Assembly (NCBI GenBank): GCA_044892525.1
Contig: CM097886.1
Span: 166,706,312-166,770,311, forward strand
Direction: 5' to 3'
Length of the DNA stretch: 64,000 bases
From: Schmidtea polychroa
Lineage: Eukaryota
Below the pieces are notes generated by a model that was given only the letters and a program-made list of their open reading frames with translations, was not told the origin of the DNA and did not search any database. Position 1 is the stretch's first letter; every line of letters begins with the position of its first letter. This document shows, in pieces, positions 28,515-56,579 of this stretch. Made by a program: the position numbers and the translations under genes.

Positions 28515-28922
28515 TCAATAGCATCGAATTTTTTTCATTATTGTTATTTGATTTTCCTTAATATATTTGAAGATCGGAGACGATTCCACGACGATCTCTC
28601 GAAACCGAAATACTTCCTCTTGGATATCACAATCCGGGTCGCAGTTATCGATAGACAAAACTGCTGGTGGTTCATAACAAGGATTTATATTCAACACAAA
28701 TGTTATGTGGCATTTCTTTGAAGGGGGGTCAGGTTTTAAATAAATAATTTGACTTCCGTTTTGATACTTAATATAAACCGGGTCGCTGAATGATTTCCCC
28801 TTCAACAGCTGATTCACGAAGCTGAAAATCTCCGGCCATGTTCGAATGTGAAGGCAAAATTCTTTCTGAATTGTTGCCATGATCAGCGAGAGAATTATTA
28901 GAGATCTGAAAATATATTTCAT
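28515..28922 (-). CDS. Secreted Cys-patterned protein, subfamily A, copy 1 (135 aa from MKYIF)
   Basis: Intact single-exon ORF with a hydrophobic N-terminus MKYIFRSLIILSLIMA and 6 Cys. The upstream ATG at 28970 lies 3 nt after a TATAAATA box, so the second ATG is the likelier start. Confidence 0.75.
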   Translation of the reverse strand: MKYIFRSLIILSLIMATIQKEFCLHIRTWPEIFSFVNQLLKGKSFSDPVYIKYQNGSQIIYLKPDPPSKKCHITFVLNINPCYEPPAVLSIDNCDPDCDIQEEVFRFREIVVESSPIFKYIKENQITIMKKIRCY

Positions 28923-29085
28923 TTGTTTTAATAGAAGAAACTGAATATTTCTGCTCAATTTATATCTCATTCTATTTATATCTCTGTACGTAAATAGATC
29001 AAATGAAAGATCTGATAATTTTATATTGAAATTGGAAAATTTATTAATCGTGATTGCTATGAATTTTGAAATAAGAAAATTTAAT

Positions 29086-29780
29086 CGTTGGGTATTTTGT
29101 GTAAATCAGTGTCACTGTCTGACTTCTCGGTGTCCTTTTATTTATCAAATCGAACCCCCAACACAATAATATTTATTTAGAATTATCATAATTACATCAC
29201 TTCTCTTTTATTACACACTTTACGGAATCAATCTCAAATTACACAACTTTAAATAACTCTTTATAATATATACACTTTCCAATTCGAACCTGATCCTTGC
29301 GCAAGGATAAATCTTCCAAAGGAAGATGTCCCTTTCTAATACGCTGGATTCAAAAAGATTTGGTTATCACTAAGTTAAATTTGCCTTTGCTTTCTTTCTC
29401 TATTCTATAACTTTTCTTTAATCGACATACTGGCGATTCTGTTTACTTACCGTTCGCTTTTATAACTATCTCGTAGTTAAACTATCCATTAATCGAATTG
29501 CTTTGAATCCCTTTTCCCTGGCTTCCCCTTACCGACCTAATTAGTTTGGGGAATTTGCTCTTTTTTTTATGGCTTGCCTCAATTTAATTATTCGTCAACT
29601 GATTCAATTGCCTCTAGCTAATTCGATTAACCACTCGGGTCCTCTCACACTAGCTCAGGATTTCTATTAGCTAATTAATTTTAAAATTAATATTAGTTTT
29701 GTAATTATTTCCTTCTGGGGATCCTCCATTGACTTTTATTCTTATCACATTTGAACTCGTCTCATTGTTCAGCATCCGGG
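29086..29780 (-). mobile_element. 5'-truncated LTR-like sequence
   Basis: TATAAAAG box, ends AAAATACCCAACG on minus (compare AAAACCCAACA of the 18329-19390 LTR), with similar U3-like motifs. Confidence 0.45.
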
Positions 29781-30727
29781 CATACTAGTTTCCCCAGGAA
29801 AATATTCATTTAAAATTTTTTTGATTTTTAATTAATATTTTTGTACTTTAAAATATTATTCTGAATTTGATGCCTTTATTGATTTTAACCTCATTTTAGT
29901 GCCTCTTTTGTTGAACCCCAAAATAATTAACTATTAATTAATTTTAAGTAATAACGAGTGAGTGGTATAAACCAAGCTAGTTATTCAGCATTACGCAATA
30001 TCTATATGGGTAATCTGATGTTTAATTTTATAAAGTTTCGTAATTCATATATATGACGACCATTGACCTCCTACATAATATTTTACCTTTGACTTCTTGC
30101 ACAATCAATTAGTTGATTAGTTTATGTAGAAATTTAATTTAATTAGTTGAAAAAATTTATAAAATAAATTTAAAATATAAAAATAAATTATGATGAAAAA
30201 TAAATTATTTTATTTATCACTTGATCAAATATTTTACAATCGAACCAAATATGTTATAAATTATTTAATGTTAAATTTATTTAATCTTGTTCACTTTTGT
30301 CATTTTTTCAATATTCAATAAGGGTAAAACAAAATAATTACAGACGCTATAAAATGTTAATTTATTTTCTTTTTTTTTCTTTTTTTACTTATGTTTTGTC
30401 AAAATTTATCGTAAGATGGTAAATATCACCACCGAATGATCAATTTATATTAAATATAATATTTTTACTATTTCCTTTAATCCAGAAAACCTTTTGGTTT
30501 TTTATCAGAGTTTATTTTTCACTCATAAAAATGAAAAAAAAAATAAGTAAAGGTCTGGAATTTTGATAAAACGATCTGAAAGCAGTCAGTCAAGACTATG
30601 TAATTACCAATGCGAAACGACGAAAATTCTAATTCTAAAAATAAAATGCTAAACTATATAAATACTAAATAATAATGAGAACATTATTTGTATAATAATC
30701 ACCACAATTGAAACAAGAAAAAGAAAA

Positions 30728-31156
30728 ATGTGGGCGAAGATATTCATGTTAATGATAATGAATGTAATTTCCACCAAGGGAACCTCAATTGAGGATTGCT
30801 TACCAAGCGCATCGTGGATGAGCATTTTCAATATAATTTCATCTCTTTCAAAAGAATATCATTTTAAACAACCGAATCCCATCAGTGAGATAAAAGGAGA
30901 ACAAGTCATTGATGTTGAATTCAACAAAGATAATGGATGCATAATGGATGGCAGTATCATAATTAACCCTTGCCTCGACCCTCCGGTTTACCTATCAATA
31001 AAGAAATGCAATTGTATACCACATTGTCAATGTAGACCTCAGTACCAAATTTATACATTCAGATGGATAAAAGTTATCAGAAAGAATATGGATTATGATT
31101 ATCTAAAATTTGTCACCTTCACAAAGGAACTCGTTGCTGGATGCGTGAGAAAATAA
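30728..31156 (+). CDS. Secreted Cys-patterned protein, subfamily B, copy 1 (142 aa)
   Basis: Intact single-exon ORF with a signal-peptide-like N-terminus, 8 Cys, and a TATATAAA box about 70 nt upstream. Confidence 0.75.
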   Translation: MWAKIFMLMIMNVISTKGTSIEDCLPSASWMSIFNIISSLSKEYHFKQPNPISEIKGEQVIDVEFNKDNGCIMDGSIIINPCLDPPVYLSIKKCNCIPHCQCRPQYQIYTFRWIKVIRKNMDYDYLKFVTFTKELVAGCVRK

Positions 31157-31323
31157 ATTTATAATTATTTTATTTTCAATAGATTAATTTCATGAATTTT
31201 TAGTTTTTAGTTTCAATTTTATCACTCCCAAGTTTCAAATTATTGACAATTACGATATCATATAGTCGGCGTAAGACATGACCAAGAAGCTGTAATAAGA
31301 TGTAATAAGGTACTGCATTTTAA

Positions 31324-32819
31324 CCCTTTCACGGCTTTGTTACGTTCGTGTCCATCTACATAAAATCTTGATTGAGTAAGTAAACTAAAATTATTTAAAT
31401 ATTTTTATTAACAAATCCTTAATTCGGAATGTATTTCTGTTAACTTCATTATGGGTAATCATTCACACATGTCAATGTAACTGAACAAAATAAAAACAAA
31501 TTTGAAAATCGCAAAAAAGCATTGCCGAAAACTCTTATTCAATATCAAATAAAATATTCGGTTATTTTCAACTCTCAAATTTCCTCAATGATTGATGGAT
31601 TTCCCTTGAATAATAAATGAGATTAATTGGTTAATATTTTTTCATATGTAACACATATTAACAACTGGGAAATTACAAAATTTGAAGTGCAAAGAAATGG
31701 CAATTTTTTAACAAATAAAAATTTAATAGGCATCGGGAAATGTTTGTCAAAACTAATTTCGATATTTTACATTTAATTTTCAATCAATTATATTTTATAA
31801 GTTTCTGTCTCCTTCCACCTTCACAAGAAAGGATTGGGGTTTTCTAAAATTTCCATTCTTCTTAAGGATGAATTAATAAGTTTAATTATCAAGATTTTTA
31901 TATTATGCAAAATTATAAATAAATATAAAATTATTTGAAAAACTGAATTTTTATTTTAAATTTGCACTTTAGTTTATTACCAATCGATTTCTTTATAAAA
32001 ACATTGCAAATATCACCCCATCGCATAAGTGTTCTTTTTTATTCCTTTTCTCTCCTACATTTACCTTTAGAATTCCTTTAAAAGATTGGAAATCCATTTT
32101 CATTCTTTCAATCATCCAATGGCATGCGATCAGCATCGCAGTTAAATGCTCAATCCAATCAAATTTGTAGATTTATTTTAAGAAATTTCTAAAAATAACA
32201 TTTGAAATTGTTGATCATAGCAACATTAAACTACAGATTTTATCAGAATGGTAAATAAAACAAACCGCAGAAACATGTTATATAAAAAAAATACGTATTG
32301 CAATTTTTTTAAAAATTAATTAATTTTTTATCTAATTTAATTGGTATATAATTTAAATAAAAAATATTCATAAAATCTACTTATATGAATCAGTTTTCAA
32401 AAATAACAATAAAAATGTGTCCAGCATGATATAATACAAATATCAGAGTTTTCGTAATAATACGTTTTGATTTTTGGACAAAAATCACAGATTGAAGTTT
32501 CATTGCAACTATTCTGGACGCCTGAGAAAGCGGGACTGACTTTTGTTTGTATTTGATATCATGACAATATATTCTGTTAAATCTGAAAGAAAAAAATTGA
32601 ATCTAAACAGGAAATGGCACAAAAGGCTAAAATTTTCTTTTTGAAATAAAGAGATTTTTCCCGTATTTTTTCCCCGGTAATATTGTATTGGTCGTAAAGA
32701 ATCATCTACCGAGAATTATTACTTTTCGCAAATTGGACTTTTTGGACCTTTAATTGTCTGACTTTAGTGTAATTTACTAAAAGATAATTTGTAACGAGTG
32801 TAACAAAGCCGTGAAAGGG
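31324..32819. mobile_element. piggyBac-like non-autonomous element at the palindrome centre
   Basis: TTAA at 31320-31323 and 32820-32823, with a 20-bp TIR CCCTTTCACGGCTTTGTTAC / GTAACAAAGCCGTGAAAGGG. No intact ORF inside. Confidence 0.6.
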
Positions 32820-32986
32820 TTAAAATGCAGTACCTTATTACATCTTATTACAGCTTCTTGGTCATGTCTTACGCCGACTATATGATATCGTAATTGTCAA
32901 TAATTTGAAACTTGGGAGTGATAAAATTGAAACTAAAAACTAAAAATTCATGAAATTAATCTATTGAAAATAAAATAATTATAAAT

Positions 32987-33415
32987 TTATTTTCTCACGC
33001 ATCCAGCAACGAGTTCCTTTGTGAAGGTGACAAATTTTAGATAATCATAATCCATATTCTTTCTGATAACTTTTATCCATCTGAATGTATAAATTTGGTA
33101 CTGAGGTCTACATTGACAATGTGGTATACAATTGCATTTCTTTATTGATAGGTAAACCGGAGGGTCGAGGCAAGGGTTAATTATGATACTGCCATCCATT
33201 ATGCATCCATTATCTTTGTTGAATTCAACATCAATGGCTTGTTCTCCTTTTATCTCACTGATGGGATTCGGTTGTTTAAAATGATATTCTTTTGAAAGAG
33301 ATGAAATTATATTGAAAATGCTCATCCACGACGCGCTTGGTAAGCAATCCTCAGTTGAGGTTCCCTTGATGGAAATTACATTCATTATCATTAACATGAA
33401 TATCTTCGCCCACAT
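32987..33415 (-). CDS. Secreted Cys-patterned protein, subfamily B, copy 2 (142 aa)
   Basis: Intact ORF differing from copy 1 at T16I, I21T and V60A. Confidence 0.75.
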   Translation of the reverse strand: MWAKIFMLMIMNVISIKGTSTEDCLPSASWMSIFNIISSLSKEYHFKQPNPISEIKGEQAIDVEFNKDNGCIMDGSIIINPCLDPPVYLSIKKCNCIPHCQCRPQYQIYTFRWIKVIRKNMDYDYLKFVTFTKELVAGCVRK

Positions 33416-36400
33416 TTTTCTTTTGCTTGACTCAATTGTGATGGTTATTATACAAATAATGTTCTCGTTATCATTTAGTTTTTATATAGTTTATCATTTT
33501 ATTTTTAGAAATTTCATTCAAAGTTTTGCATTGGCTATTAATAAACATCTTGACTGATTGCTTTCAGATCGTTTTATCAAAATTCCAGACCTTTACTAAT
33601 TTTTTTTTATTTTTATGAGTGAAAAATAAACTCTGATAAAAAACCAAAAGGTTTTCTGGATTAAAGGAAATAGTAAAAATATTATATTTAATATAAATTG
33701 ATCATTCGGTGGTGATATTTACCATCTTACGATAAATTTTGACAAAACATAAGTAAAAAAAGAAAAAAAAAGAAAATAAATTAACATTTTATAGCGTCTG
33801 TAATTATTTTGTTTTACCCTTATTGAATATTGAAAAAATGACAAAAGTGAACAAGATTAAATAAATTTAACATTAAATAATTTATAACATATTTGGTTCG
33901 ATTGTAAAATATTTGATCAAGTGATAAATAAAATAATTTATTTTTCATCATAATTTATTTTTATATTTTAAATTTATTTTATAAATTTTTTCAACTAATT
34001 AAATTAAATTTCTACATAAACTAATCAACTAATTGATTGTGCAAGAAGTCAAAGGTAAAATATTATGTAGGAGGTCGTCATATATATGAATTACGAAACT
34101 TTATAAAATTGAACATCGGATTATCCATATAGATATTGCGTAATGCTGAATAACTAGCTTGGTTTATACCACTCACTCGTTATTACTTAAAATTAATTAA
34201 TAGTTAATTATTTTGGGGTTCAAGAAAAGAGGCACAAAAATGAGGTGAAAATCAATAAAGACATCAAATTCACAATAATATTTTAAAGTACAAAAATATT
34301 AATTAAAAATCAAAAAAATTTTTATATAAATATTTTCCTGGGGAAACTGAAAAATATTTTTAAAATCTCAATATCAGACATACAGAGACATAATTTTTAA
34401 TAATTTCTAAACACGATGGCTCGGCGTTTAGTTACACTTGTGCAATGCTATGCATTACACCCAATTCCGAAATTTAGCAACATCTATAATTCACGTTAGT
34501 GAGCACACTAGTTGAAGTGAGTCAACTTTTACGTGAAAATGAAGTTACTCAATTTCATTTATTCAATTTCTTAAAAATGGTTTTCAGGTACTTTTATTAA
34601 TTTCAAGTCACTTTAAGACTTGAATTTTGATTTTATATAATTATGAGATCATTATTCAAGTTCTTAAATATTACTGTTAGTCAGTATTTATAATATAACA
34701 TATTGATAATTAAATTTCAGGTGTTTTTTTTAGGAATTTTGACATTTTATGAATTTAATTGGAATTATTTCGATAAAATGTAAGTTGGATATATTTTTGA
34801 TTATAAATTTACATTTATTTTTTTAATACAATTAGGAAAGAAGGAAAGGCTGAATTTTGTCATTTTCTGTATATCTATGAAAATATTAATTTATTAAAAT
34901 AATTTATTTAAATTTACGAATTGTGAATTTCTTTCTGCAAATTCTAATGTTTTGTAATTTAATGAATAAATCTTACATTGTCAAATCTAAGGAAAGTTTA
35001 TATGCTAAATTATTTTATTCTTTTTCTCTGAAGCTCAAGGTAGAATTGTCGGATTCTAAATAAAAAGTATTTTCTTACAAATTTTTTAATAATTTCAAAA
35101 TAATTATATTTTAACAATATGTTAATGGTTATTGATTTCGGAACAAAAAAAGCTATATTAAATTTTCATGCATTTTTCATTATGTGTTTTGTGTTGGTAT
35201 GTTCAATTATTTTTCTCTCACCTTCACAGAATCCTATAATAAAGTTATTAAATTTCGAAACAATAAATTTCTACACACAGGTAAGTTTGTGTGTTCCTAT
35301 ACTATAAATTTATTGATTTTTTTTAGATTATTGTAGTTACTAAATTTCGGAATTAGGTGTAGAGTTCCTTTTTTGTATGTATACTGAGTTATAAATAGAT
35401 TGTTGCAGGATATTTAGGATAAAAAATAAAAAAAATAAAATAAAGTAAAAAAGAAAATATTCAGTGCTAATTCATTCAAGAATTTTTATAGTAATTTGGG
35501 CGATGAAGTATTTCAAATTTTAAAAATCGATACTAATATGAATTGTCATATATGTGATTGTGGATCATGAAAACCATCATCAGTGGTAAATTCTACGAAT
35601 AAGAACTCCAAGTCATTTCACCAACAAAGATATTTAGAATTCAAAACTTTTTAACAATTCAATATAATAAGAAATAATAACAATACTGTGTTATGTTATT
35701 AAATTCCAACTTTGATAAAACCTAAAATTCCTGAAGCTATACCTACCTAAAAATAAGTACTAAGAACAAAGTTCCTTGTACAAAATATTTGAGAACACTT
35801 TTCCCAAAACTTCACTTTACATTTCGTATTAATTCTGTTTTCTCGTCTCTCTTCTTTTTAAATTGTGTTTCCGTTTTTCTTTTCAACTTACGTCTTATTT
35901 TGTTCTTTTCGAATTTTGTCCTTTAAAAATTCCAAAGGTTGACTCAATTTGTGTTTTCTTTCATAGTCTGCAATCTAATGGCACTTACTGATATTGACTT
36001 TCGTCTATATTCCTTCTTTTCGTACTTTCCCTTTGGTCATATCCACTTCTTTTATTATCCCTTACACCTGTCGAGTTATATAATTTTTAGAAGACGCAAT
36101 TTCTAGTCTGTTCCAGTAATACATTTCTTTATCTCCTACAGCCTATCGAGATATGATAATTTAATTTCGATTTTGTTTTCCTTCATCGCTTTCTACATTA
36201 TTCACCCGATCGTATATTTAATCACTTATTATTGGATTTCATCATTTAGCTATCCTCAACAAAATTGAAATTTAAACCTTTATAAATTATAGTCTTATAA
36301 AGGCCTTCCAATCAGGTGAATATGCAAATAATTAATAGAAATGTTACATCTTCCTTTCTGTTATTAAATTTATCAACATTTCTGTTCTAATAAAAATATA

Positions 36401-37020: not shown

Positions 37021-37428
37021 TCAATAGCATCGAATTTTTTTCATTATTGTTATTTGATTTTCCTTAATATATTTGAAGATCGGAGACGATTCTACGACGA
37101 TCTCTCGAAACCGAAATACTTCCTCTTGGATATCACAAACGGGGTCGCAGTTATCGATAGACAAAACTGCTGGTGGTTCATAACAAGGATTTATATTCAA
37201 CACAAATGTTGTGTGGCATTTCTTTGAAGGGGGGTCAGGTTTTAAATAAATAATTTGACTTCCGCTTTGATACTTAATATAAACCGGGTCGGTGAATGAT
37301 TTCCCCTTCAACAGCTGATTCACAAAGCTGAAAATCTCCGGCCATGTTCGAATGTGAAGGCAAAATTCTTTCTGAATTGTTGCCATGATCAGCGAGAGAA
37401 TTATTAGAGATCTGAAAATATATTTCAT
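37021..37428 (-). CDS. Secreted Cys-patterned protein, subfamily A, copy 2
   Basis: Intact, with four amino acid differences from copy 1. Part of a ~2.1-kb duplicated unit (about 35450-37547). Confidence 0.75.
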   Translation of the reverse strand: MKYIFRSLIILSLIMATIQKEFCLHIRTWPEIFSFVNQLLKGKSFTDPVYIKYQSGSQIIYLKPDPPSKKCHTTFVLNINPCYEPPAVLSIDNCDPVCDIQEEVFRFREIVVESSPIFKYIKENQITIMKKIRCY

Positions 37429-37834
37429 TTGTTTTAATAGAAGAAACTGAATATTTCTGCTCAATTTATATCTCATTCTATTTATATCTCTGTACGTAAA
37501 TAGATCAAATGAAAGATCTGATAATTTTATATTGAAATTGGAAAATTAAGGGTTATATTGAATAATTAAGTAAATTAAGGGCTTGATTTGGTAATCAACT
37601 AAATTAATTAAATTGACAGATATATTTCAAAATTAAGTAAGTTAAGGGTATTATTTTAGATGCATAGCTGTAAAGTGGAATTCCCGTAAAATGGAGTTCT
37701 CATAAAATTGAAAATATAAACAAGGCGTTTAATAGATAATAAAATCAAATAATCAAGGATTTTATTTTTAATAAAAACTTAAGAACTCATAATTTTTTAA
37801 TAGATTAATTTGTCAAAATTCTTCCAATCCTTTA

Positions 37835-39599: not shown

Positions 39600-40300
39600 T
39601 AGGTAGAAGTGAGCCCACGATGAGTCATCGCGGGATCACTACTACCAGTCATATAAAATTTTGAGGTCAACTTAAGGGCAAATTTTAAGGTCAATGTCGT
39701 TTTCAGGACAATTTAAGGTCAATTTAAGCAATTTTGAGGTCAACGTCGATTTTAGGCCATTTTAAGGTCAACTTTTGAGGCCTCAATATAAAATTATCAG
39801 ATCTTTCATTTGATCTATTTACGTTCAGAGATATAAATAGAATGAGATATAAATTGAGCAGAAATATTCAGTTTCTTCTATTAAAACGAATGAAATATAT
39901 TTTCAGATCTCTAATAATTCTCTCGCTGATCATGGCAACAATTCAGAAAGAATTTTGCCTTCACATTCGAACATGGCCGGAGATTTTCAGCTTCGTGAAT
40001 CAGCTGTTGAAGGGGAAATCATTCACCGACCCGGTTTATATTAAGTATCAAAACGGAAGTCAAATTATTTATTTAAAACCTGACCCCCCTTCAAAGAAAT
40101 GCCACACAACATTTGTGTTGAATATAAATCCTTGTTATGAACCAACAGCAGTTTTGTCTATCGATAACTGCGACCCGGATTGTGATATCCAAGAGGAAGT
40201 ATTTCGGTTTTCGAGAGACCCCCAATTTTGGGTCATAGAAAAATTAAGGTCAACCCCTACCCCCTTAATTTTAAGGTCATATTGAGGTCAAAATTAAAAA
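39600..40300 (+). repeat. AGGTCA-rich repeat element enclosing a subfamily A gene fragment
   Basis: Starts TAGTAGGTAGAAGTGAG and runs (T/A)AAGGTCA arrays to 39782, resuming at about 40219 (GGGTCATAGAAAAATTAAGGTCAACCCCT). Colinear with the reverse complement of 47356-47605. Confidence 0.7.
39890..40218 (+). pseudogene. Subfamily A copy 3, 3'-truncated
   Basis: Near identical to the other copies up to EEVFRF, then a 1-nt insertion; homology is lost at 40218. Confidence 0.85.
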
Positions 40301-40447
40301 TTTTAAAAATTTTCTTAAGTCCATTTAACGAATTACTTTTGTTGGTTACTTAGGGGTGTGTCATTTTAAATTTTTAAATGCATTAGGGGTAATCATATAT
40401 ATTCCCTCGACTCTTTCCTAAGCACCTCCATGACTATTGCAATTTAA

Positions 40448-42494: not shown

Positions 42495-42507
42495 TTATTT
42501 ATCAAAA

Positions 42508-42562
<55 letters not shown>

Positions 42563-42781: not shown

Positions 42782-42841
<60 letters not shown>

Positions 42842-42850
42842 ATTATTAAT
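42495..42850. repeat. (ATT)n microsatellite tracts
   Basis: Long ATT runs at about 42505-42557 and 42748-42848. Confidence 0.9.
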
Positions 42851-43721
42851 ATTGCAAATATTAGTGCAAATCCTAAAATATTTTTTACACACATACACAA
42901 CTCATTGAACTTTATTATTAATATTATTTTTCAAATTATTAATATTTTTTTCAAAGTANNNNNNNNNNNNNNNNNNNNNNNNNNNNNNNNNNNNNNNNNN
43001 NNNNNNNNNNNNNNNNNNNNNNNNNNNNNNNNNNNNNNNNNNNNNNNNNNNNNNNNNNNNNNNNNNNNNNNNNNNNNNNNNNNNNNNNNNNNNNNNNNNN
43101 NNNNNNNNNNNNNNNNNNNNNNNNNNNNTTATATATAGTCCCAGTTTATGCGACAAGATATTCTGTCCCCATATTGGTATTGCTGGCAAGGGTACTGGTC
43201 ACATTCAACATTTCGCAAGGGTATATTAATTAAGGTTATTATTATAAGGTTATACTATTTTTAATAATATTTAAACGATAAAAATCAAGACAAGAGAGGA
43301 AAGGCAAAGTTTATGCATTTAGTATTGCCAGGCCTAATGAGCAGTGACCAAATATCTGTGCCTGAAAGACACGGTGGATATTTGTTCGCGTCCACAAGGA
43401 TCGTCTGTGCCTCCCCAAGTGGGGTCAGAAGAACCTGGGCATTATAGATTTCCGTACGGAACATTACGCCTAGCATGGGTAGTCAACTACCATTACATTC
43501 GAAACGTATAAAAATACATGCATCATTGGCACTATAACCAAATTAATTAATGTTTTCACTAACAACAATATATATTTACAGAGGCCTCCCACCAGTTTGA
43601 TTGCAACCGCCACCACGACGATCAGCTTGTAATTATTAATTAAGGGATAAAGAGGACCCACCCAACCCTATTATATTTAATTTACAAAGGGTTTCTCGCT
43701 CTTCTGGAATTTGTTGGTAAT

Positions 43722-46951: not shown

Positions 46952-47355
46952 TAATAATAATCACATATTAAGAATATACACCCATGTTATAGTATGTGCA
47001 ATACATTATAATGTGTGTATAATTTTCCCTTAATTATCACTCCATATTGACAATTTCCTGTAAAGACAAACACAGAAAACAGATTTTTCATAAATTTAAT
47101 ATTTAATTAATTAGTGCAAACATATAATAATTCTCTACCCTATAACTTATGTGTGTAAAAATATTTTAGGNNNNNNNNNNNNNNNNNNNNNNNNNNNNNN
47201 NNNNNNNNNNNNNNNNNNNNNNNNNNNNNNNNNNNNNNNNNNNNNNNNNNNNNNNNNNNNNNNNNNNNNNNNNNNNNNNNNNNNNNNNNNNNNNNNNNNN
47301 NNNNNNNNNNNNNNNNNNNNNNNNNNNNNNNNNNNNNNNNNNNNNNNNNNNNNNN

Positions 47356-47605
47356 TAGGAAATAGGGGGTTGACCTTAAAATTTTCTATGACCTTAAATT
47401 TTGACCTTACATTTGGAAAAATTAGACTTTGGCCTCACACATTGACCTTAAATAGCCTAAAATCGACTTTGACCTCAGAATTTGACCTTAAAATGGCTTA
47501 AATTGACCTTAAATTGTCCTGGAAATGACATTGACCTTAAAATTTGATCTTAAGTCGACCTCAAAATTATCTATGACCTTAAGTTGACCTCACTTCTACC
47601 TACTC
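47356..47605 (-). repeat. AGGTCA/TGACCT array upstream of subfamily A copy 4
   Basis: About 12 TTGACC(T)-type hexamers at irregular spacing, ending CTCACTTCTACCTACT. A second copy lies at 55795-55980. Confidence 0.8.
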
Positions 47606-47723
47606 ACTTGTCGCTACTTCAAATTAATTAATAGTTAATTAAAACAATTAAATTTCCTAATAAATCACGATTAATACATTTTCCATTTTCAATATAAAAT
47701 TATCAGATCTTTCATTTGATCTA

Positions 47724-48704
47724 TAGGGTTTTTAGTTTAAATAGATTTTTTTTTAATTAATGAATATTTTTTTTTAATTGATGAGTATTTTTTTTAATCG
47801 ATGAATATTTTATTTTAATTAATTAATGTTTTATTTTAATTAATGAATGTTTTTCTGTGAACCCTTTATGGACCAACCAAATTGTATACCGGACAGAAGG
47901 TCCAAAAATATGTCAGATGAAAAACGTCTTGTTCCTCGAGAAAGTAAATGAAGGAAAAAAATTTCTATTCTTTGATGAAACAGGTTTCCAAGTAACAATG
48001 AGGAAACATTATGGAAGATCAAAAAAAGGGAAGAAGGCCATTGAGATAGCTCCAGGAATCAAATCAAGAAATAAAACCGTTATGACTTGTATGTGGAAAG
48101 GCGGGCTAATCCATTATGCAGCTTTAAATACAGCTGGAAATCGAGTTTCTTGTTTGGAATTCATGGAAACACTATGTGAAATTTTAACTTTTGAAAACTT
48201 AACGAATGTGACAATAGTTATGGATAATGTCTCATTTCATAAGTGTAGTGAAATTTCAACCTTTATTGAATCGAAAAAACACCAAATCAAGTTTCTACCA
48301 CCCTATAGTCCATTTTTCAATCCCATTGAATTCATGTTTTCTCAATGGAAAGGTATTGTAAGATCACGAAAACCAAATACTGATGTCGAGCTTTTGAGAA
48401 TTATCGATGATTTTCAAAACATCCTAACGGTAGAACAATGCGAAAATTATGTGAGGCATGTTACAAACAATATTATAAAATGTTTGGGTGGTATAAATGT
48501 ATTCGAGGAATAAATATTTTCATTTTAACTTTATTTATTTACCGAATCTTGTTGGTTTATCGTTAATATACATTTTACTCGTGTTTACAAAAATGAATTC
48601 AAAATAAATATTTTTATAAATATTCATCAATTAAAAAAAAATATTCATAAATTAAAAAAAACACTCATCAATTAAAAAAAAATCTATTTAAACTAAAAAC
48701 CCTA
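47724..48704 (+). mobile_element. Tc1/IS630-like DD34E element, internally deleted (lacks the HTH)
   Basis: TIR TAGGGTTTTTAGTTTAAATAGATTTTTTTT, TA duplication at 47722-47723 and 48705-48706 (empty site GATCTATTTACG is seen in the other A copies). ORF 47857-48513 has FFDETGF, MDNVSFH and PYSPFFNPIE, with 34 residues between D and E. Confidence 0.92.
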
Positions 48705-49451
48705 TATTTACGTACAGAGATATAAATAGAATGAGATATAAATTGAGCAGAAATATTCAGTTTCTTCTATTAAAACAAATGAAATATATTTTCAGATCTC
48801 TAATAATTCTCTCGCTGATCATGGCAACAATTCAGAAAGAATTTTGCCTTCACATTCGAACATGGCCGGAGATTTTCAGCTTCGTGAATCAGCTGTTGAA
48901 GGGGAAATCATTCACCGACCCGGTTTATATTAAGTATCAAAGCGGAAGTCAAATTATTTATTTAAAACCTGACCCCCCTTCAAAGAAATGCCACACAACA
49001 TTTGTGTTGAATATAAATCCTTGTTATGAACCACCAGCAGTTTTGTCTATCGATAACTGCGACCCGGATTGTGATATCCAAGAGGAAGTATTTCGGTTTC
49101 GAGAGATCGTCATAGAATCGTCTCCGATCTTCAAATATATTAAGGAAAATCAAATAACAATTGTTAGAAGCTATAACATTTAATTCTTCTGTCATCAAAA
49201 TAAATTACTAAGACTATTAAATCCAAAATTATATTTCATCAAATCTGATTATATAAACAAATATTCTTGGGACATTTTCTAAATTTTAATTTCAACCAAA
49301 TATCAACATACCATCGCATTCATACTTGAATTTCAATTTTATTAAAAATTATTTTATTTTAAAATTTCAATTATCATTTCAATTTTAATATCTTAAAATA
49401 ATTTAAGTTTCAATTAAAATTTTACAAATTTTAATCATGAACTAATTTAAT

Positions 49452-52400
49452 TTAGTATTTTAATTTTAACTCCTCACATCCCCCTTTTTTAAAATGTTTG
49501 ATCTTCTCAACATTTCTGACTACCATCTTCCCATTTTGATCTTTAAGTAAGTAGCTCCGTTCATGTATTTTCTTTATCACTTTGTACGGCCCTTCCCACC
49601 TTGTATCGTCTTTATTTCGAATTTCTTGTTTGATCAAAACCAAATCTTCCATTTCAAAATCTCTCACTGTTTTGCTTATTTTTGGTTTTAGTGTTTTATC
49701 CTCTATTCTCTTTTCCATATCTTCTCTATTTATTTCTTTATTCGAGTACCATTTCATTCTGTCGATTTTCCTCCCAAATATAATCTCTGCTGGGCTTACT
49801 CCCGTTGTTTTTTGAACTGTTGCATTTAAAGTATATTCTATTTCTGGCACTATATCAGCCCAGTTTTTCCTTCCTCCTTCATTCAATGACGCGTTAATAT
49901 ACTCTCTGATTGTTCTGAATTGTCTTTCAATAATACCATTCGTGTTATGGTGATATGGGCTTGAGAAAATTAATTCAATGCCAGCTGCCTTTGCTAGTTC
50001 TTTTATACTTCTTGCTTCAAAGTTCTTCCCACAATCTACATGAAGTTTTTTTGGAGCTCCAAACTTTAATATCCATTTATTTAATAACGTCTCACTAATT
50101 GTTTTTTCGTCTTGCTTGTTTATGGCCGTTAATGAGATGTATTTACTATAGTGGTCAATGATTCCGCAAATATATTTCTTTTTGTTGAACGTTTCTTTCA
50201 ATGGCCCACATATATCCATATATATCTTCTCGAATGGTTCTGTACTCTTTATTGTTTGAGTTTCCTCCTTTGTCTTGGTTGTTATCGTTTTCATTTTCTG
50301 ACATCTTTCGCAGTTCTCAATTACCTTTTTTACTTCCGTTGCTAAATTTTCCATGTCGCAGTTATTCTGGATATATTTCGTTACTTTCTGTGCACCTGCA
50401 TGGCACAGCAATACGTGTACTTCTTTTATCATCCTCTGTCTATTATCTGACGGTATCCATATTTTACCTTGCTTAGTTAGTACCGTGTTGTTTTCCATTA
50501 TGAACTTACAATCTTTATTTTCTAACTTATTCTTTATTTCTTGGACCTCCATATTGTCATTTTGCCACTTGTTATATCCGCCTTCTGCTGTTACTGTTAA
50601 TATTCTGGTTTTAATTTTGCCGGTTTTTGGGTCTTCGTGTTCCATCATACACTGTACACATGTTCCGCATGTTTTCCTGGATAGCATATCCGCGTTTGTA
50701 TGGCTTGTTCCTTTCCTGTATTCCATTTTAATATCCAGGCTGCTTAAATAGTTGATCCATGTCTGGAATTGAGCAGTTATTGGTTTCTTCGTTGTTACCA
50801 TAAACGTAATAGCTTTATGGTCCGTTCTCAGTACGAATCTCTTACCATATAAGTAATGGTTGAAATGTTTACAAAAATAGTATATTGCCAATAATTCTTT
50901 TCTGGTAATGCAGTATCCTTTTTCGTGGCTGCTCATCGCATGTGAACCATATGCAATGACATGTTCATGTCCTTTTTCATCCTTTTGCGAAAGAACTGCT
51001 CCAATAGTATCGAAGCTCGCGTCTGTGTCTAATATAAATTCTTTTCTGAAATCTGGAAATACCAATACTGGGGCGGTTATCAATGCTTCTTTCATTTCCC
51101 CGAAAGCCTTTTCACACATCTCTGTCCATCTTATTTTCTCATTGTTTTTTCCGCATATGCTTTCTAGTGCTCTTGCCTTCTTTGCATAGTCTTTTATGAA
51201 CCGTCGATAATAGTTACAGATACCCAGAAAACTCCTCAGATTCTTTACACATTTTGGCTTTTGAAATGATTGTATTGCTTCTATCTTAGTATTATCTGTT
51301 TGTATGCCGTCTTTATTTATTATGTGTCCCAGAAACTTCACTTCTTTTCTAAATATTTGACATTTTTCGGGGTTCAATCTTAGTCCTGCTGTTGCGATCT
51401 TCCCTAGGACTTTTCCAAATATGTTATAATGGTCTTCTTCTGTCTTTGTGAATATTAGGATGTCGTCTAAATATACCATCACTCCATCTTTCCACAAATC
51501 TTTCAATACTTTCGTCATTAATTCTTGAAATGTTCCTGGTGCCGCTGCAATACCGAACGGCATCCTGTTAAAACAGAACTGTCCTTCTTTTGTTGAGAAT
51601 GCTGTTTTCTCTTGAGATTCTTTATCTAACTTCACTTGGTAATAAGCATTTCCCAAGTCGATTGAGCTAAAATATCTGGATCCGTGTAGGATGTCTAAAA
51701 TTTCATCTACATTTGGCATTGGAAATGCCTGTCTTTCTGTTATCTTGTTTAATTGTCTGAAGTCTAGACAAAGCCTGATGTCTTTTTTCTCTTTCTTCCA
51801 TACACAAACTAAAGGTGTGTTCCACGGTGAATTACACTTCCTAATTATTCCGTTGTTTTCTAGATTTTTTATTGCTTCCTCAATCTTGTCTTCCAAATTT
51901 ATTGGCTGACGTCTCGGTTTAATCATTATTGGCTCTCCTTTCGTGATGATCTTATGTTTTATCAGATTGGTACACCCAATGTCCCATTTATCTGCCATAA
52001 AAACATTCTTGTTTGCCTGAAATATTTCTAACAGTCTCTTATTTCCGGTAACCTTTAAAACGTCGATGGCATGACGTAATCTTTCTTCATCTGTTATAAT
52101 CCGCCCAAATCTAGCTTCTATTTCGCAAATGAAATCACTACGTTTTTCATGTTCTTCTAGTATACATTTCAATTCTATACCAAATAACCTTTGTAGTTCT
52201 ACTCCTCCAATAATTTCTGGTATTAAATTCTTTACTATAATGAATGTTACATTTCTTTCAATACTGCCCATTTTATCATTGATGTTTATTTTACCCATAG
52301 TTTCTAATCTACTGTTGTTTGCACATCTTAGCGATTCCCTTGTTTCTAATATTTCGATATTTTCTAATCTATCAATTACAGATTTAGCCATCACATTAAT

Positions 52401-52796
52401 TCGCGCTCCTGTATCCAATAAACAATCTACTTTCCGCCCTTGAATATCCAGTGTTGTACTCGGTCTACCTTGCATTATATTATATGTTATTACTGGACTT
52501 TTTTGTTCTTCTACTGACAAAATATTCTGCTCTCTAGTATCTTCTACAATTTCATTAATACACACGTCTCCATTTTTCTTGAGGAATTTGTAAATTTTCT
52601 CTATAGTTCTTTCCTCGTGTTTTACTAATTCATTTGCTTTACACTCCTCTTTAAATTTTTTCTGAATTTCCTTATCATTCGACTTTTTGATTTCTACACT
52701 ACTATTATTATTAATATCACGTTCAAAAACACTACAATCTTTATCAATCATACAATCATCATACATACTTAAATTACACATACCGTTAGCATTCAT
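49452..52796 (-). CDS. pol: Gypsy Pol (protease, RT, RNase H, integrase), intact
   Basis: LLDTGA, YLDD, TDAS, HxxxxH/CxxC, MDICGP, HVDCG, NGIIER and a GPY motif, in PR-RT-RH-IN order. Confidence 0.97.
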   Translation of the reverse strand: MNANGMCNLSMYDDCMIDKDCSVFERDINNNSSVEIKKSNDKEIQKKFKEECKANELVKHEERTIEKIYKFLKKNGDVCINEIVEDTREQNILSVEEQKSPVITYNIMQGRPSTTLDIQGRKVDCLLDTGARINVMAKSVIDRLENIEILETRESLRCANNSRLETMGKININDKMGSIERNVTFIIVKNLIPEIIGGVELQRLFGIELKCILEEHEKRSDFICEIEARFGRIITDEERLRHAIDVLKVTGNKRLLEIFQANKNVFMADKWDIGCTNLIKHKIITKGEPIMIKPRRQPINLEDKIEEAIKNLENNGIIRKCNSPWNTPLVCVWKKEKKDIRLCLDFRQLNKITERQAFPMPNVDEILDILHGSRYFSSIDLGNAYYQVKLDKESQEKTAFSTKEGQFCFNRMPFGIAAAPGTFQELMTKVLKDLWKDGVMVYLDDILIFTKTEEDHYNIFGKVLGKIATAGLRLNPEKCQIFRKEVKFLGHIINKDGIQTDNTKIEAIQSFQKPKCVKNLRSFLGICNYYRRFIKDYAKKARALESICGKNNEKIRWTEMCEKAFGEMKEALITAPVLVFPDFRKEFILDTDASFDTIGAVLSQKDEKGHEHVIAYGSHAMSSHEKGYCITRKELLAIYYFCKHFNHYLYGKRFVLRTDHKAITFMVTTKKPITAQFQTWINYLSSLDIKMEYRKGTSHTNADMLSRKTCGTCVQCMMEHEDPKTGKIKTRILTVTAEGGYNKWQNDNMEVQEIKNKLENKDCKFIMENNTVLTKQGKIWIPSDNRQRMIKEVHVLLCHAGAQKVTKYIQNNCDMENLATEVKKVIENCERCQKMKTITTKTKEETQTIKSTEPFEKIYMDICGPLKETFNKKKYICGIIDHYSKYISLTAINKQDEKTISETLLNKWILKFGAPKKLHVDCGKNFEARSIKELAKAAGIELIFSSPYHHNTNGIIERQFRTIREYINASLNEGGRKNWADIVPEIEYTLNATVQKTTGVSPAEIIFGRKIDRMKWYSNKEINREDMEKRIEDKTLKPKISKTVRDFEMEDLVLIKQEIRNKDDTRWEGPYKVIKKIHERSYLLKDQNGKMVVRNVEKIKHFKKGGCEELKLKY

Positions 52797-52819
52797 TCTT
52801 TGGTTGAAATCAATCTTAC

Positions 52820-53882
52820 TTAGTAAATTGCTCCGATCAATGTCCCGTTTGACGGAGCGTGCTCGTTTGGGTCATTCTCCCTGTTATACTCGTCTGGCTG
52901 GCTTGACTGTTTTGTATTCATCATCTCATCATCAGACTCGATAGCTGCAATATCTTTTCTGTTATATTGTTGGTTTCCCCATTGTCTCTGATGTACGTTC
53001 CTTGATTGATACATATCTTCCCTTTGTTGATAGGTATTTCTTTGAATTCTTCCTCCTGACATCTTCCTTTGGTCTCGATCTCTTCCTTGGTTTCGTCTTT
53101 CCATATTTGTGTAGCACTCTCTTTCTTTGTGTCCTCGTGCATTGCATCTATGACATTTGATTGTTGGGCATTCTCTTCGTATGTGACCTTCAACACCACA
53201 TGCATAACATTGAAATCTTCTTTTTATATTACATTCTCTGCTACTGTGTCCCGGTTTTTTACACGTCCAGCATTCTATCACTTTAATTCTTGTCTCTGGT
53301 TTCCATTCGTTGATTTTTCTCTTCGTGGCTCCAACTTGTACTACATCTCTATAAGTTCTTCCTCCAGTTGTAAGTCGTATTGATCTCACCGTGTTTACTT
53401 GTTCAATAACCTTGTTAACTTTTTCTATCTTCTTTATAGTTTCTTTAATTTGTTCCGCCGTTTTGAGATCTTTCATTTCGATTTCTTTCCTGACTTCTTT
53501 ATCTTTTACACAATGTGTCAATAAACATTTCTGAATTTCTTCCTCATTCCAAGTGTGTGAGGCCAATTTTTTAGTCATTTTTGATATTTTCGTTACCTTG
53601 CTCGTAGTTCAAGGCTTCTCTTAAATCATCAATCAATGACGTTGGTCGATGAAAAGCTGCTCTTAATTTCTGTTCAACGGTTTTACCTTCTGCGGTTTCA
53701 TATTCTTCAATCAAAGTCCTGTCCAGAAGTGTAATAACTAGTACCATTTGGGTCTTCACTGGTGTCTTCGTTATTTCAAAGAACCTCTGACTTTCTTTGA
53801 TAAATAATTCGAGGTCATCTCCTCTGTGGAATTTTTCTGGAAGTAATCTTCCAATAAGCAGATCCGTTGGAATGGTCGCCAT
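52820..53882 (-). pseudogene. gag: Gypsy Gag with CCHC knuckles, frameshifted near 53580
   Basis: ORFs 53571-53918 (MATIPTDLL from 53882) and 52820-53578 (CWTCKKPGHSSREC, CYACGVEGHIRREC, CHRCNARGHKEREC) are in different frames. Confidence 0.85.
52830..52871 (-). promoter_or_regulatory. Putative -1 programmed ribosomal frameshift signal (gag-pol)
   Basis: C CCA AAC heptamer (52865-52871) in the gag frame, a 6-nt spacer, and the hairpin GCTCCGTCAA-ACGGGACA-TTGATCGGAGC. The pol frame is -1 and open from 52871. Confidence 0.75.
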
Positions 53883-55794
53883 GTTAGAAGCTATAACATT
53901 TAATTCTTCTGTCATCAAAATAAATTACTAAGACTATTAAATCCAAAATTATATTTCATTAAATCTGATTATATAAACAAATATTCTTGGGACATTTTCT
54001 AAATTTTAATTTCAACCAAATATCAACATACCATCGCATTCATACTTGAATTTCAATTTTATTAAAAATTATTTTATTTTAAAATTTCAATTATCATTTC
54101 AATTTTAATATCTTAAAATAATTTAAGTTTCAATTAAAATTTTACAAATTTTAATCATGAACTAATTTAATTTAGTATTTTAATTTTAACTCCTCACAAC
54201 AATAATGAAAAAAATTCGATGCTATTGAAATATCAGCAATATTCTCACAGAACTTGCAAATTTGAAATAGGCATTGACATTTTTATTTTTGTTTTTATTT
54301 ATGGAAATAAATTTTATATTTTTAATTAATAAAATAAGTTATTAATTGATCAAAAAATTATTATGAAAACAAAATAAAAACTTACTTGAAGATAAATAAA
54401 TCGATATTCTTTCACATCAATCAATGGTAGCACATCTATTTGTGAAGGTGCATAGAAAGGTTTGGCTTGTACCACTCGCAGGGTCCAGAATAATAGTTAC
54501 CATTTATTGTCAGTAACAAAAATGTTTCAAAGTTTATTTCTAAATAATTAATAATTAATTGGATCAATTTGGATCCAATATTAAAAGAAATACCAAAAAA
54601 AAATTAAATTTTATTGATTTCACAATTCTGCTGTTGATCAAGAAAAATTAATTAATGAAAACAACAAAAGTAATTATTAATTATTTATTTTATAAATTAA
54701 ATTCTGATTATTGCTATTTTAATATTTTTAATTTTTAATTTTTTTTGTGTTATTTATCAGAGAAATTAAAATATTTTGAAAAGTGTTCATTAAAAAGATA
54801 AAAGTTTGGATTAAATTTATTCATTTTTTTATTGATAAATGATTTAAGAAAAATATATTTTTATTAGAACAGAAATGTTGATAAATTTAATAACAGAAAG
54901 GAAGATGTAACATTTCTATTAATTATTTGCATATTCACCTGATTGGAAGGTTTCGGCATTTATAAAGTTTTAAATTTCAATTTTGTTGAGGATAGCTAAA
55001 TGATGAAATCCAATAATAAGTGATTAAATATACGATCGGGTGAATAATGTAGAAAGCGATGAAGGAAAACAAAATCGAAATTAAATTATCATATCTCGAT
55101 AGGCTGTAGGAGATAAAGAAATGTATCACTGGAACAGGCTAGAAATTGCGTCTTCTAAAAATTATATAACTCGACAGGTGTAAGGGATAATAAAAGAAGT
55201 GGATATGACCAAAGGGAAAGTACGAGAAGAAGGAATATAGACGAAAGTCAATATCAGTAAGTGCCATTAGATTGCAGACTACAAAAGAAAACACAAAGAA
55301 AACCTTTGGAATTTTTAAAGGACAAAATTTTAAAAGAACAAAATAAGACGTAAGTTGAAAAGAAAAAGGGAAACACAATTTAAAAAGAAGACAGACGAGA
55401 AAACAGAATTAATACGAAATTAAAAGTGAAGTTTTGGTAATAGTGTTCTCAAATATTTTGAACAAGGAACTTTGTTCTTAGTACTTATTTTTAGATAGGT
55501 ATAGCTTCAGGAATTTTAGGTTTTATCAAAGTTGGAATTTAATAACATAACACAGTATTGTTATTATTTCTTATTATATTGAATTGTTAAAAAGTTTTGA
55601 ATTCTAAATATATTTGTTGGTGAAATGACTTGGAGTTCTTATTCGTAGAATTTACCACTGATGATGGTTTTCATGATCCACAATCACATATATGACAATT
55701 CAGATTAGTATCGATTTTTAAAATTTGAAATACTTCATCGCCCAAATTACTATAAAAATTCTTGAATGAATTAGCACTGAATATTTCCTTTTTT

Positions 55795-55980
55795 AATTAG
55801 ACTTTGGCCTCAAACGTTGACCTTAAAATAGCCTTAAATCGACGTTGCCCTCAGAACTTGACCTTAAAATGGCTTAAATTGGCCTTAAATTGTCCTCGAA
55901 ATGACATTGACCTAAAAATATGATCTTAAGTCGACCTCAAAATTTTCTATGACCTTAAGCTGACCTCACTTCTACCTACT
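55795..55980 (-). repeat. AGGTCA/TGACCT array upstream of subfamily A copy 5
   Basis: Near copy of 47424-47605; marks the start of the second tandem unit. Confidence 0.8.
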
Positions 55981-56171
55981 CACTTGTCGCTACTTCAAAT
56001 TAATTAATAGTTAATTAAAACAATTAAATTTCCTAATAAATCACGATTAATACATTTTCCATTTTCAATATAAAATTATCAGATCTTTCATTTGATCTAT
56101 TTACGTTCAGAGATATAAATAGAATGAGATATAAATTGAGCAGAAATATTCAGTTTCTTCTATTAAAACAA

Positions 56172-56579
56172 ATGAAATATATTTTCAGATCTCTAATAAT
56201 TCTCTCGCTGATCATGGCAACAATTCAGAAAGAATTTTGCCTTCACATTCGAACATGGCCGGAGATTTTCAGCTTCGTGAATCAGCTGTTGAAGGGGAAA
56301 TCATTCAGCGACCCGGTTTATATTAAGTATCAAAGCGGAAGTCAAATTATTTATTTAAAACCTGACCCCCCTTCAAAGAAATGCCACATAACATTTGTGT
56401 TGAATATAAATCCTTGTTATGAACCACCAGCAGTTTTGTCTATCGATAACTGCGACCCGGATTGTGATATCCAAGAGGAAGTATTTCGGTTTCGAGAGAT
56501 CGTCGTGGAATCGTCTCCGATCTTCAAATATATTAAGGAAAATCAAATAACAATAATGAAAAAAATTCGATGCTATTGA
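56172..56579 (+). CDS. Secreted Cys-patterned protein, subfamily A, copy 5
   Basis: Intact ORF; TATAAATA at 56114-56121. Confidence 0.75.
   Translation: MKYIFRSLIILSLIMATIQKEFCLHIRTWPEIFSFVNQLLKGKSFSDPVYIKYQSGSQIIYLKPDPPSKKCHITFVLNINPCYEPPAVLSIDNCDPDCDIQEEVFRFREIVVESSPIFKYIKENQITIMKKIRCY

What the first reader, a model, noticed from the sequence alone, without database searches (positions are those of the whole stretch)
28515..56579. Seven-copy cluster of an unassigned small secreted Cys-patterned protein family with two divergent subfamilies
Seen: five A copies (135 aa) and two B copies (142 aa), all intronless with signal-peptide-like N-termini. A and B are otherwise very divergent, yet they share C-L-x4-W-x2-IF near the N-terminus (C23/C24). 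They also share Cys at exactly positions 71, 82 and 94 within INPC-x-[ED]-PP-x2-LSI, plus FR[FW] and a C-terminal Cys. I recognise no known domain. Inference: an old lineage-specific disulfide-bonded secreted family (toxin, mucus, immune or gland product) that is still being amplified at this locus.
Basis: partly seen in the sequence, partly recalled or inferred. Interest (0 to 1): 0.78.

Follow-up and report, generated by a model that had tools for sequence, protein, structure and literature searches.

The report
Planarian Ston-like secreted cytokine-fold gene cluster
The seven copies are real genes of a planarian-only family of at least 34 small secreted proteins. The family includes the wound- and bacteria-induced gene ston, and its predicted shape most resembles IL-17-type signalling proteins, so it may be an unrecognised cytokine family, though this is not proven.

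Summary
Only three A copies are intact. A3 is frameshifted and truncated. A4 is split by a young LTR retrotransposon and has a Tc1-like element in its promoter. Neither assembly gap touches a copy.

A and B are true homologues (31% identity, E 3e-12). They belong to a family with at least 34 genomic matches, arranged in clusters on three chromosomes. The family is not wholly unassigned. A profile built without Ston detects the published planarian protein Ston (hmmsearch E 2.9e-9; hhalign 97.8%). Papers describe ston as an epidermal gene induced by wounding and by heat-killed E. coli.

Best reading (0.6): a fast-evolving secreted family with a reduced cystine-knot cytokine-like fold, growing and decaying by duplication and transposon hits. 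Membership of IL-17 proper is not shown.

The parts
28515..28922 (-). A1: intact 135-aa gene including its stop codon. The mechanical ORF runs on to an upstream ATG at 28970.
   Evidence: 100% to the query. A TATAAATA box at 28981-28974 sits directly before the first ATG, so the ATG at 28922 is the likely start (inference). AATAAA lies at 28437-28432. Contigs of the runs guessed to be RNA cover 28421-28907.
29787..31349 (.). Left arm of the inverted duplication; it carries B1.
   Evidence: 96.6% identity to 34348-32794; the arm ends are 31349 and 32794, with a 1444-bp spacer between them.
30728..31156 (+). B1: intact 142-aa gene.
   Evidence: AF2 model pLDDT 88.9. A B-like contig covers 30523-31309 in run X1.
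32794..34348 (.). Right arm of the inverted duplication; it carries B2.
32987..33415 (-). B2: intact 142-aa gene, 4 nt and 3 aa different from B1.
   Evidence: coding sequence 99.07% identical against 96.24% in the upstream arm.
37021..37428 (-). A2: intact 135-aa gene.
39890..40218 (+). A3: pseudogene. It has a +1 T frameshift at 40208-40211, and homology ends at 40218, so the C-terminal quarter is lost.
   Evidence: (only residues 1-108 match). A high-copy repeat begins about 115 nt beyond the break.
47725..48705 (+). Tc1/mariner-like element of 981 bp, with terminal inverted repeats of about 87 bp and a TA target duplication. It is inserted about 20 bp upstream of A4's TATA box and carries a 218-aa DDE_3 ORF at 47857-48513.
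   Evidence: DDE_3, E 1.4e-25.
48779..49161 (+). A4, 5' part: the gene is interrupted seven codons before its stop.
49162..54198 (-). LTR retrotransposon inside A4. Its LTRs are at 49162-49478 and 53882-54198, its target duplication is ACAAT, and its gag and pol ORFs lie on the minus strand.
54199..54228 (+). A4, 3' remainder: the duplicated ACAAT, the last codons and the stop.
56172..56579 (+). A5: intact 135-aa gene, one nucleotide different from A1.
42959..43128 (.). Assembly gap, outside all copies.
47171..47355 (.). Assembly gap, 65 bp before A4's upstream repeat and outside all copies.

Best explanation
The locus is one cluster of a planarian-specific multigene family that I call Ston-like. 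Its genes have no introns in the coding region and encode proteins of about 135-150 aa. Each protein has a signal peptide, then an N-terminal helix (the W-P-E-I motif), then two long beta-hairpins. The hairpins are pinned by two conserved disulfides, inferred as C71-C98 and C94-C134. The A and B lineages carry a third, C23-C82.

The predicted fold is a reduced cystine-knot cytokine fold, nearest to IL-17. I think the proteins are secreted extracellular ligands or defence factors of the wound and infection response, like their relative ston.

The cluster evolves by birth and death. Units are duplicated in tandem and in inverted orientation (A units of about 2.4 kb; the B palindrome). Copies are then lost to transposon insertions (A3, A4).

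Shown: the copies, their homology, the family size, the link to Ston, coding constraint, and the transposon breaks. Inferred: secretion, the disulfide pairing, the cytokine-like fold, and the function.
For: Family:
- There are 26 matches to A alone and 34 to the family profile in the window's own genome. They lie in clusters on C2 (76.4-76.7, 153.0-153.5, 155.1, 165.7-165.8 and 166.7 Mb), on C1 and on C4.
- Most are uninterrupted ORFs of 135-151 aa.

Link to Ston:
- A profile built without Ston hits it at E 2.9e-9, and hhalign gives 97.8% probability, E 1.2e-12.
- The protein is named Ston, S. mediterranea, AFJ24718.1. A gene on C4 of this genome is 87% identical to it.
- ston is induced in the epidermis by injury and by heat-killed E. 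coli (bioRxiv 10.64898/2026.05.17.725704; PMC10560571).

Fold:
- The A model has pLDDT 85.6 and the B model 88.9, with the same order of secondary-structure elements.
- In AFDB-SwissProt the top hits are oyster IL-17-like (E 6.5e-3, probability 1.0) and IL-17B, then PDGF-B/A/D rows; IL-17F, Noggin-2, IL-25, IL-17C, IL-17A, ILC-17.1 and Trunk follow further down.
- In the ESM Atlas search by shape, the top hit is IL-17a/f at TM 0.46 and 0.41.
- Language-model features of B (0.92) and of Ston (0.91) both point to the IL17, NGF and Spaetzle clusters.

Secretion:
- Every full-length member has an N-terminal hydrophobic 10-mer with a mean Kyte-Doolittle score of 2.3-3.5.
- Most members have an even number of Cys in the mature part.

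Disulfides:
- C23 and C82 occur together in 12 of 24 members, and C82 never occurs without C23.
- One lineage lacks exactly C71 and C98.

Coding constraint:
- dN/dS is 0.24-0.78.
- Coding sequence is more conserved than its flanks.

Expression:
- Contigs of two runs guessed to be RNA cover only the A and B genes plus a short repeat-like stretch (sparse 29270-29804, strong 29797-29868). A DNA run covers the whole stretch.
Against: - There is no sequence-level link to any known family. Pfam gives nothing for any of 21 members. The PDB sequence search gives nothing. An exhaustive HMM search of 1.84 billion proteins finds only flatworm-like relatives and spurious bacterial Ig-repeat proteins.
- The Cys pattern is neither the IL-17 pattern nor the canonical six-Cys knot.
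- The feature search gave no usable hit for A.
- Neither the IL17 (PF06083) nor the SEFIR (PF08357) model found a match in the genome. These are weak negatives.
- The homodimer prediction gave no verdict.
- The RNA status of the runs is only a guess.
- Wound induction is known for ston, not for A or B.
Confidence: 0.6

Rival explanations
1. The family consists of true, extremely diverged IL-17 orthologues. They act as dimeric cytokines through a diverged IL-17-receptor-like pathway.
For: IL-17 family members are the top structural hits for both models in several libraries. They are also the top language-model clusters for B and Ston. Invertebrate IL-17 genes are likewise very divergent, often expanded and often in tandem arrays (PMC4517768). 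ston is induced by bacteria and by wounding.
Against: The Pfam IL17 model finds nothing in the proteins or the genome. No SEFIR domain was found. The C-terminal C-x-C is absent from A and B, and the four conserved Cys sit differently. The N-terminal helix is not an IL-17 feature. The dimer test gave no verdict.
Confidence: 0.25
2. The family is a secreted effector family with a new alpha+beta fold that merely resembles beta-hairpin cytokines. It would be, for example, an antimicrobial, adhesive or mucus-associated epidermal product and not a signalling ligand.
For: The fold matches are weak, and alpha+beta two-layer folds score nearly as well. The family evolves fast and has high copy number, as expected of direct defence effectors. 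ston is epidermal.
Against: Three independent kinds of search converge on cystine-knot ligands: Foldseek 3Di, VIA-align and ESM features. They do so for three members that are under 35% identical to each other.
Confidence: 0.3
3. The ORFs are non-functional, or are cargo of repeats or transposons, and do not encode a host protein family.
For: The region is rich in transposons, and the copies sit inside repeated units.
Against: The members are clustered, not dispersed. ORFs stay open across paralogues that are only 20-35% identical, with invariant W, PP and Cys. dN/dS is below 1. Coding sequence is better conserved than its flanks. There is no match to any transposon protein. A member is a published, expressed gene.
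Confidence: 0.03

Closest known systems
Ston (Schmidtea mediterranea, GenBank AFJ24718.1 / UniRef100_I1ZI64), a wound-induced epidermal gene
   Same: It is a member of the same family by sequence (hmmsearch E 2.9e-9, hhalign 97.8%). It shares the signal peptide, the S-W-x-E-I helix, the Q-x-[VI]-x-L strand, the C...INP..EPPA...C core, the size and the lack of introns.
   Different: It is only about 25-30% identical to A and B, and the match covers the N-terminal two thirds. It lacks C98 and C82 and ends in C-x-C instead of a single Cys. It lies on another chromosome (C4, about 26.96 Mb).
Interleukin-17 family (Pfam PF06083), including invertebrate IL-17-like proteins
   Same: It is the best structural match for both models, with two long beta-hairpins tied by disulfides near their base. 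It is small and secreted. In invertebrates it forms multigene tandem arrays, evolves fast and is induced by infection (PMC4517768).
   Different: There is no sequence or HMM similarity. The Cys positions differ: CI/CII/CIV/CV-like here, against CII/CIII/CV/CVI in vertebrate IL-17. This mapping is my inference. The family has an extra N-terminal helix. No SEFIR receptor was detected.
Other cystine-knot ligands: PDGF/VEGF, NGF/Spaetzle, PTTH/Trunk, Noggin, TGF-beta/DAN
   Same: They recur among the top fold hits and the feature hits. VEGF and PDGF also have an N-terminal helix (the helix is from my own knowledge).
   Different: They have six knot cysteines; this family conserves four. TM scores are 0.2-0.35 and there is no sequence similarity.

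Membership tests
Ston-like family (planarian) | Significant sequence similarity to Ston, using a profile that does not contain Ston | tested here: met
   E 2.9e-9; hhalign probability 97.8%, E 1.2e-12 over 72 columns.
Ston-like family (planarian) | Induction by wounding or bacteria, and epidermal expression | not testable with these tools
   This is known only for ston itself. For A and B there are only gene-restricted contigs in runs guessed to be RNA.
IL-17 (PF06083) | Match to the Pfam IL17 model | tested here: not met
   No hit at E up to 10 in 21 members. No hit in the genome at E up to 1.
IL-17 (PF06083) | IL-17 fold: two beta-hairpins joined by knot-type disulfides | tested here: inconclusive
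IL-17 (PF06083) | Four conserved Cys: two on strand 2 and C-x-C on strand 4 | tested here: not met
   A and B have a single C-terminal Cys and a conserved Cys before strand 1. Only Ston has the C-x-C.
IL-17 (PF06083) | A cognate receptor with a SEFIR domain in the same genome | tested here: inconclusive
   No PF08357 match. The search is six-frame and exon by exon, with no positive control, so this is a weak negative.
IL-17 (PF06083) | Homodimer formation | tested here: inconclusive
   The complex-prediction job returned no verdict.
Canonical cystine-knot growth factors | Six knot cysteines (I-IV, II-V, III-VI) | tested here: not met
   Only four Cys are conserved across the family (C71, C94, C98, C134). 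The C23/C82 pair lies outside the knot positions.
Secreted protein | N-terminal signal peptide | tested here: inconclusive
   The hydrophobic core is present in all full-length members, and its sequence is not conserved. No SignalP run was possible, and the cleavage site is not defined.
Transposon-encoded protein | Similarity to transposon proteins, dispersed copies and terminal repeats | tested here: not met
   No Pfam hit. The copies are clustered. The transposons at the locus are separate insertions.

The most novel reading that the evidence does not exclude
The Ston-like family would be the planarian's own cytokine system. Its members would be IL-17-type cystine-knot ligands, diverged beyond sequence recognition and expanded to more than 30 genes. 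The epidermis would release them on wounding or microbial contact, and they would signal through a receptor not yet identified. That would supply the unknown extracellular signal linking injury sensing, immunity and regeneration.
Probability: 0.25. Interest if true: 0.8.

Novelty: new variant of a known kind. Interest (0 to 1): 0.6.

Why it matters
Planarians are a leading model of regeneration, but I know of few secreted signals identified upstream of their generic wound and immune response (my own knowledge). ston is used as a marker of that response and is described as planarian-specific.

If ston belongs to a family of more than 30 genes with an IL-17-like fold, three things follow:
- There is a concrete, testable candidate for a flatworm cytokine system.
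- It would be an example of a cytokine family that only structure-based methods can recognise.
- There is a set of loci for RNAi and expression studies.

The locus also shows gene birth and death by duplication and transposon insertion caught in progress.

Tried and rejected
- Pfam on A, B and 19 relatives gave only noise.
- A profile search of PDB sequences gave only chance hits to haemagglutinin at E about 6.
- The word-indexed protein search with A alone found nothing. With the alignment it found only Ston and one metagenome protein, both already in the query, so that result is circular.
- The exhaustive profile search also returned four long bacterial proteins. Pfam shows them to be Ig, PKD or FG-GAP repeat proteins, so I rejected them as spurious.
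- ESM feature search for A gave no usable hit.
- The homodimer prediction for mature A gave no verdict. It is evidence neither for nor against dimerisation.
- IL17 and SEFIR family searches of the window's own genome found nothing, but there was no positive control.
- A profile-profile test against IL-17 was not done. No tool gave me IL-17 sequences, and I did not type any from memory.
- The original ston paper (PMC3347795) is not held.
- Searches of the scan's own findings for the family, by words and by sequence, were blank.
Full report
**1. What is in the sequence**

The window is AT-rich (about 25-35% GC). It lies at C2:166,706,312-166,770,311 of a 781-Mb genome with four large chromosome-scale contigs.

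All seven ORFs of the finding exist:
- A1 28515-28970(-)
- A2 37021-37476(-)
- A3 39842-40285(+)
- A4 48731-49183(+)
- A5 56124-56579(+)
- B1 30728-31156(+)
- B2 32987-33415(-)

The four assembly gaps in the window are at 23059-23203, 42959-43128, 47171-47355 and 61709-61920. None touches a copy. The only ORF that crosses N (47151-47501) is an artefact of mechanical translation. The gap at 47171-47355 ends 65 bp before the repeat upstream of A4, so the true number of units there is unknown. I did not try to fill any gap.

**2. The copies are not all alive**

A self-comparison of the window shows that the A genes sit in repeated units. Each unit holds a gene, about 1.6 kb downstream and about 0.3 kb upstream. 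Some units are in tandem (A4, A5) and some are inverted (A1, A2 against A3-A5).

A1, A2 and A5 are intact and differ by 1-7 nucleotides in 405.

A3 is a pseudogene:
- It has an extra T in the run at 40208-40211.
- Its homology stops at 40218, so the protein matches only residues 1-108.
- About 115 nt further on begins a repeat. At least 40 scored copies, out of 2,804 candidates, are 96-99% identical and lie on all four large chromosomes.

A4 was hit twice:
- An LTR retrotransposon occupies 49162-54198. Its two 317-bp LTRs (TG..CA) differ at one base. It is flanked by the 5-bp duplication ACAAT, and the last codons of A4 follow at 54199-54228.
- A 981-bp Tc1/mariner-like element sits at 47725-48705, about 20 bp upstream of the TATA box. 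It has terminal inverted repeats of about 87 bp, a TA duplication and a DDE_3 ORF.

B1 and B2 lie in the arms of an inverted duplication (29787-31349 and 34348-32794, 96.6% identical, 1444-bp spacer). I confirmed the arms but not its piggyBac reading.

**3. Gene models**

All five A copies have TATAAATA ending three bases before the first ATG. Transcription should therefore start downstream of that ATG. The second ATG then gives the 135-aa protein, whose start lines up with the other family members. This is an inference.

AATAAA lies 78 nt after the A1 stop.

In two small runs guessed to be RNA, contigs cover only 28421-28907 (A), 30523-31309 (a B-like copy with 32 differences) and a short repeat-like stretch (sparse 29270-29804, strong 29797-29868). 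A DNA run covers every bin. This suggests that both genes are transcribed without introns in the coding region. The runs are not on record as RNA, and contigs cannot show strand or expression level.

**4. A and B are homologous members of a large family**

- A against B gives 31% identity and E 3e-12.
- Cys 71, 82 and 94 share the same numbers in both proteins.
- The genome holds 26 matches to A alone and 34 to a family profile. They lie in clusters on C2 (76.4-76.7, 153.0-153.5, 155.1, 165.7-165.8 and 166.7 Mb), on C1 (127.2 Mb) and on C4 (26.9 Mb).
- Nearly all are uninterrupted ORFs of 135-151 aa. A few are broken.
- W29, P85-P86, C94 and C134 are invariant. Q58, C71, I79 and C98 are nearly invariant.
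- dN/dS between paralogues is 0.24-0.78.
- Coding sequence is better conserved than its flanks: 99.1% against 96.2% for B, and 98.3-99.8% against 91-98% for A.
- In a maximum-likelihood tree, A is a long isolated branch and B groups with a C1 gene (support 94/91). The deep nodes are unresolved. A and B are therefore old paralogues that happen to be neighbours, not sister subfamilies.

**5. Secretion and disulfides**

Every full-length member starts with a hydrophobic stretch (best 10-mer mean Kyte-Doolittle score 2.3-3.5, beginning at residue 3-12). The sequence of this stretch is not conserved. Most mature parts have an even number of Cys: 4, 6 or 8.

Presence and absence of Cys across 24 members gives the following:
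- C23 and C82 occur together in 12 members.
- Both are absent in 9.
- C82 never occurs without C23.
- The lineage of L025 lacks exactly C71 and C98 but keeps C94 and C134.

I infer the pairs C23-C82, C71-C98 and C94-C134. I could not check this on coordinates, because the tools do not give them.

**6. The family is not anonymous**

An exhaustive profile search of 1.84 billion proteins found 13 hits. Eight are small proteins from short metagenome contigs, presumably other flatworms. Four are bacterial Ig-repeat proteins, which are spurious.

The thirteenth is Ston of Schmidtea mediterranea (AFJ24718.1), at E 2.9e-9. The profile did not contain Ston. hhalign gives 97.8% probability.

A gene on C4 of this genome is 87% identical to it. 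The genome is therefore S. mediterranea or a close relative.

In the papers held, ston is called an epidermal, planarian-specific, early wound-induced gene. It is also induced by heat-killed E. coli, and its authors place it in the defence arm of the wound response (10.64898/2026.05.17.725704). It is misregulated after alx-3 RNAi (PMC10560571).

**7. Fold**

Pfam and PDB sequence searches are blank.

The AlphaFold2 models are confident:
- A: pLDDT 85.6, pTM 0.72.
- B: pLDDT 88.9, pTM 0.76, with all five models at 87-89.

Both show the same order of elements: signal helix, a helix at about residues 29-44, a short strand at the Q-x-I-x-L motif, then four long strands that form two hairpins.

No single match is strong, but all the searches agree:

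| Search | Model | Best matches |
|---|---|---|
| Foldseek, PDB | A, B | PDGF, VEGF, PTTH, IL-17A/F |
| Foldseek, AFDB clusters | A | Spaetzle-domain and PDGF entries, plus uncharacterised invertebrate proteins |
| AFDB-SwissProt | B | oyster IL-17-like (E 6.5e-3, probability 1.0) and IL-17B; then PDGF-B/A/D; further down IL-17F, Noggin-2, IL-25, IL-17C, IL-17A, ILC-17.1, Trunk |
| ESM Atlas, by shape | A, B | IL-17a/f, TM 0.41 and 0.46 |

Language-model features give independent support. B (0.92, 189 of 256 features shared) and Ston (0.91, 184 shared) both hit first a mollusc cluster carrying IL17, then NGF, IL17 and Spaetzle clusters. A gave no usable hit.

Against this:

I therefore put the cystine-knot-cytokine-like fold at about 0.6, and true IL-17 ancestry at about 0.25.

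**8. Comparison with IL-17**

Same:
- small and secreted;
- a two-hairpin architecture;
- multigene tandem arrays, extreme divergence and induction by infection, as in invertebrate IL-17 (PMC4517768).

Different:
- There is no HMM match in the proteins or in the genome.
- The conserved Cys are at other positions, and the C-terminal C-x-C is present only in Ston.
- There is an N-terminal helix.
- No SEFIR domain was found in the genome (a weak negative).
- The dimer test gave no verdict.

I do not file the family under IL-17.

**9. Verdict**

It can be sharpened in two ways. This is the ston family of planarians, and its predicted fold points to cystine-knot cytokines of the IL-17 type.

In the papers I could search, I found no description of ston as a multigene family or as cytokine-like. 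That search covers open-access papers only.

Noticed in passing
window 49162-54198: An LTR retrotransposon that looks complete. It has a 1114-aa pol ORF (protease, RT, RNase H and integrase by its order of motifs), gag ORFs with zinc knuckles, and LTRs that are 99.7% identical. It is therefore a recent insertion.
   Followed up: partly
window 40331-40900 and beyond: A high-copy repeat. At least 40 scored copies, out of 2,804 candidates, are 96-99% identical and lie on all four large chromosomes. It starts about 115 nt after the A3 break. I did not classify it.
   Followed up: partly
window 37835-38670: Two adjacent ORFs carry a weak MULE transposase match (E 4e-4). They are probably a decayed Mutator-like element between A2 and A3.
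   Followed up: no
window 23665-26306: Two long ORFs (472 and 392 aa) look like a hAT or ZBED-type transposase by eye. I did not scan them.
   Followed up: no
window 30523 and 31309 (run X1, 1270-nt contig): A B-like contig leaves the reference at both ends. Its upstream part matches sequence found downstream of A2, A4 and A5 (for example 56748-56777). Its downstream part matches 32747-32776, beside B2. This suggests another arrangement or a further B copy in the sampled strain.
   Followed up: partly
window 28758 (run X2, 361-nt contig): The contig covering 28421-28758 continues with 23 A's on the plus strand, inside the A1 coding region and antisense to it. This is unexplained. It could be an antisense transcript end, internal priming or a chimera.
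   Followed up: no
window 31300-31349 and 32794-32843: The inner ends of the B palindrome arms contain TTAACCC. I found no ORF of 100 aa or more in the spacer.
   Followed up: partly
G000:C2:165674743-165675081 (L055/L061): A B-like family member with an in-frame TAG, truncated after the C-x-C-x3-C-x-C stretch. It is another dead copy, about 1 Mb from the window.
   Followed up: no
window 15144-15721; 19472-20106 and 27200-27851: A 289-bp tandem duplication (95% identical) and a 78%-identical inverted repeat pair lie upstream of the cluster.
   Followed up: no
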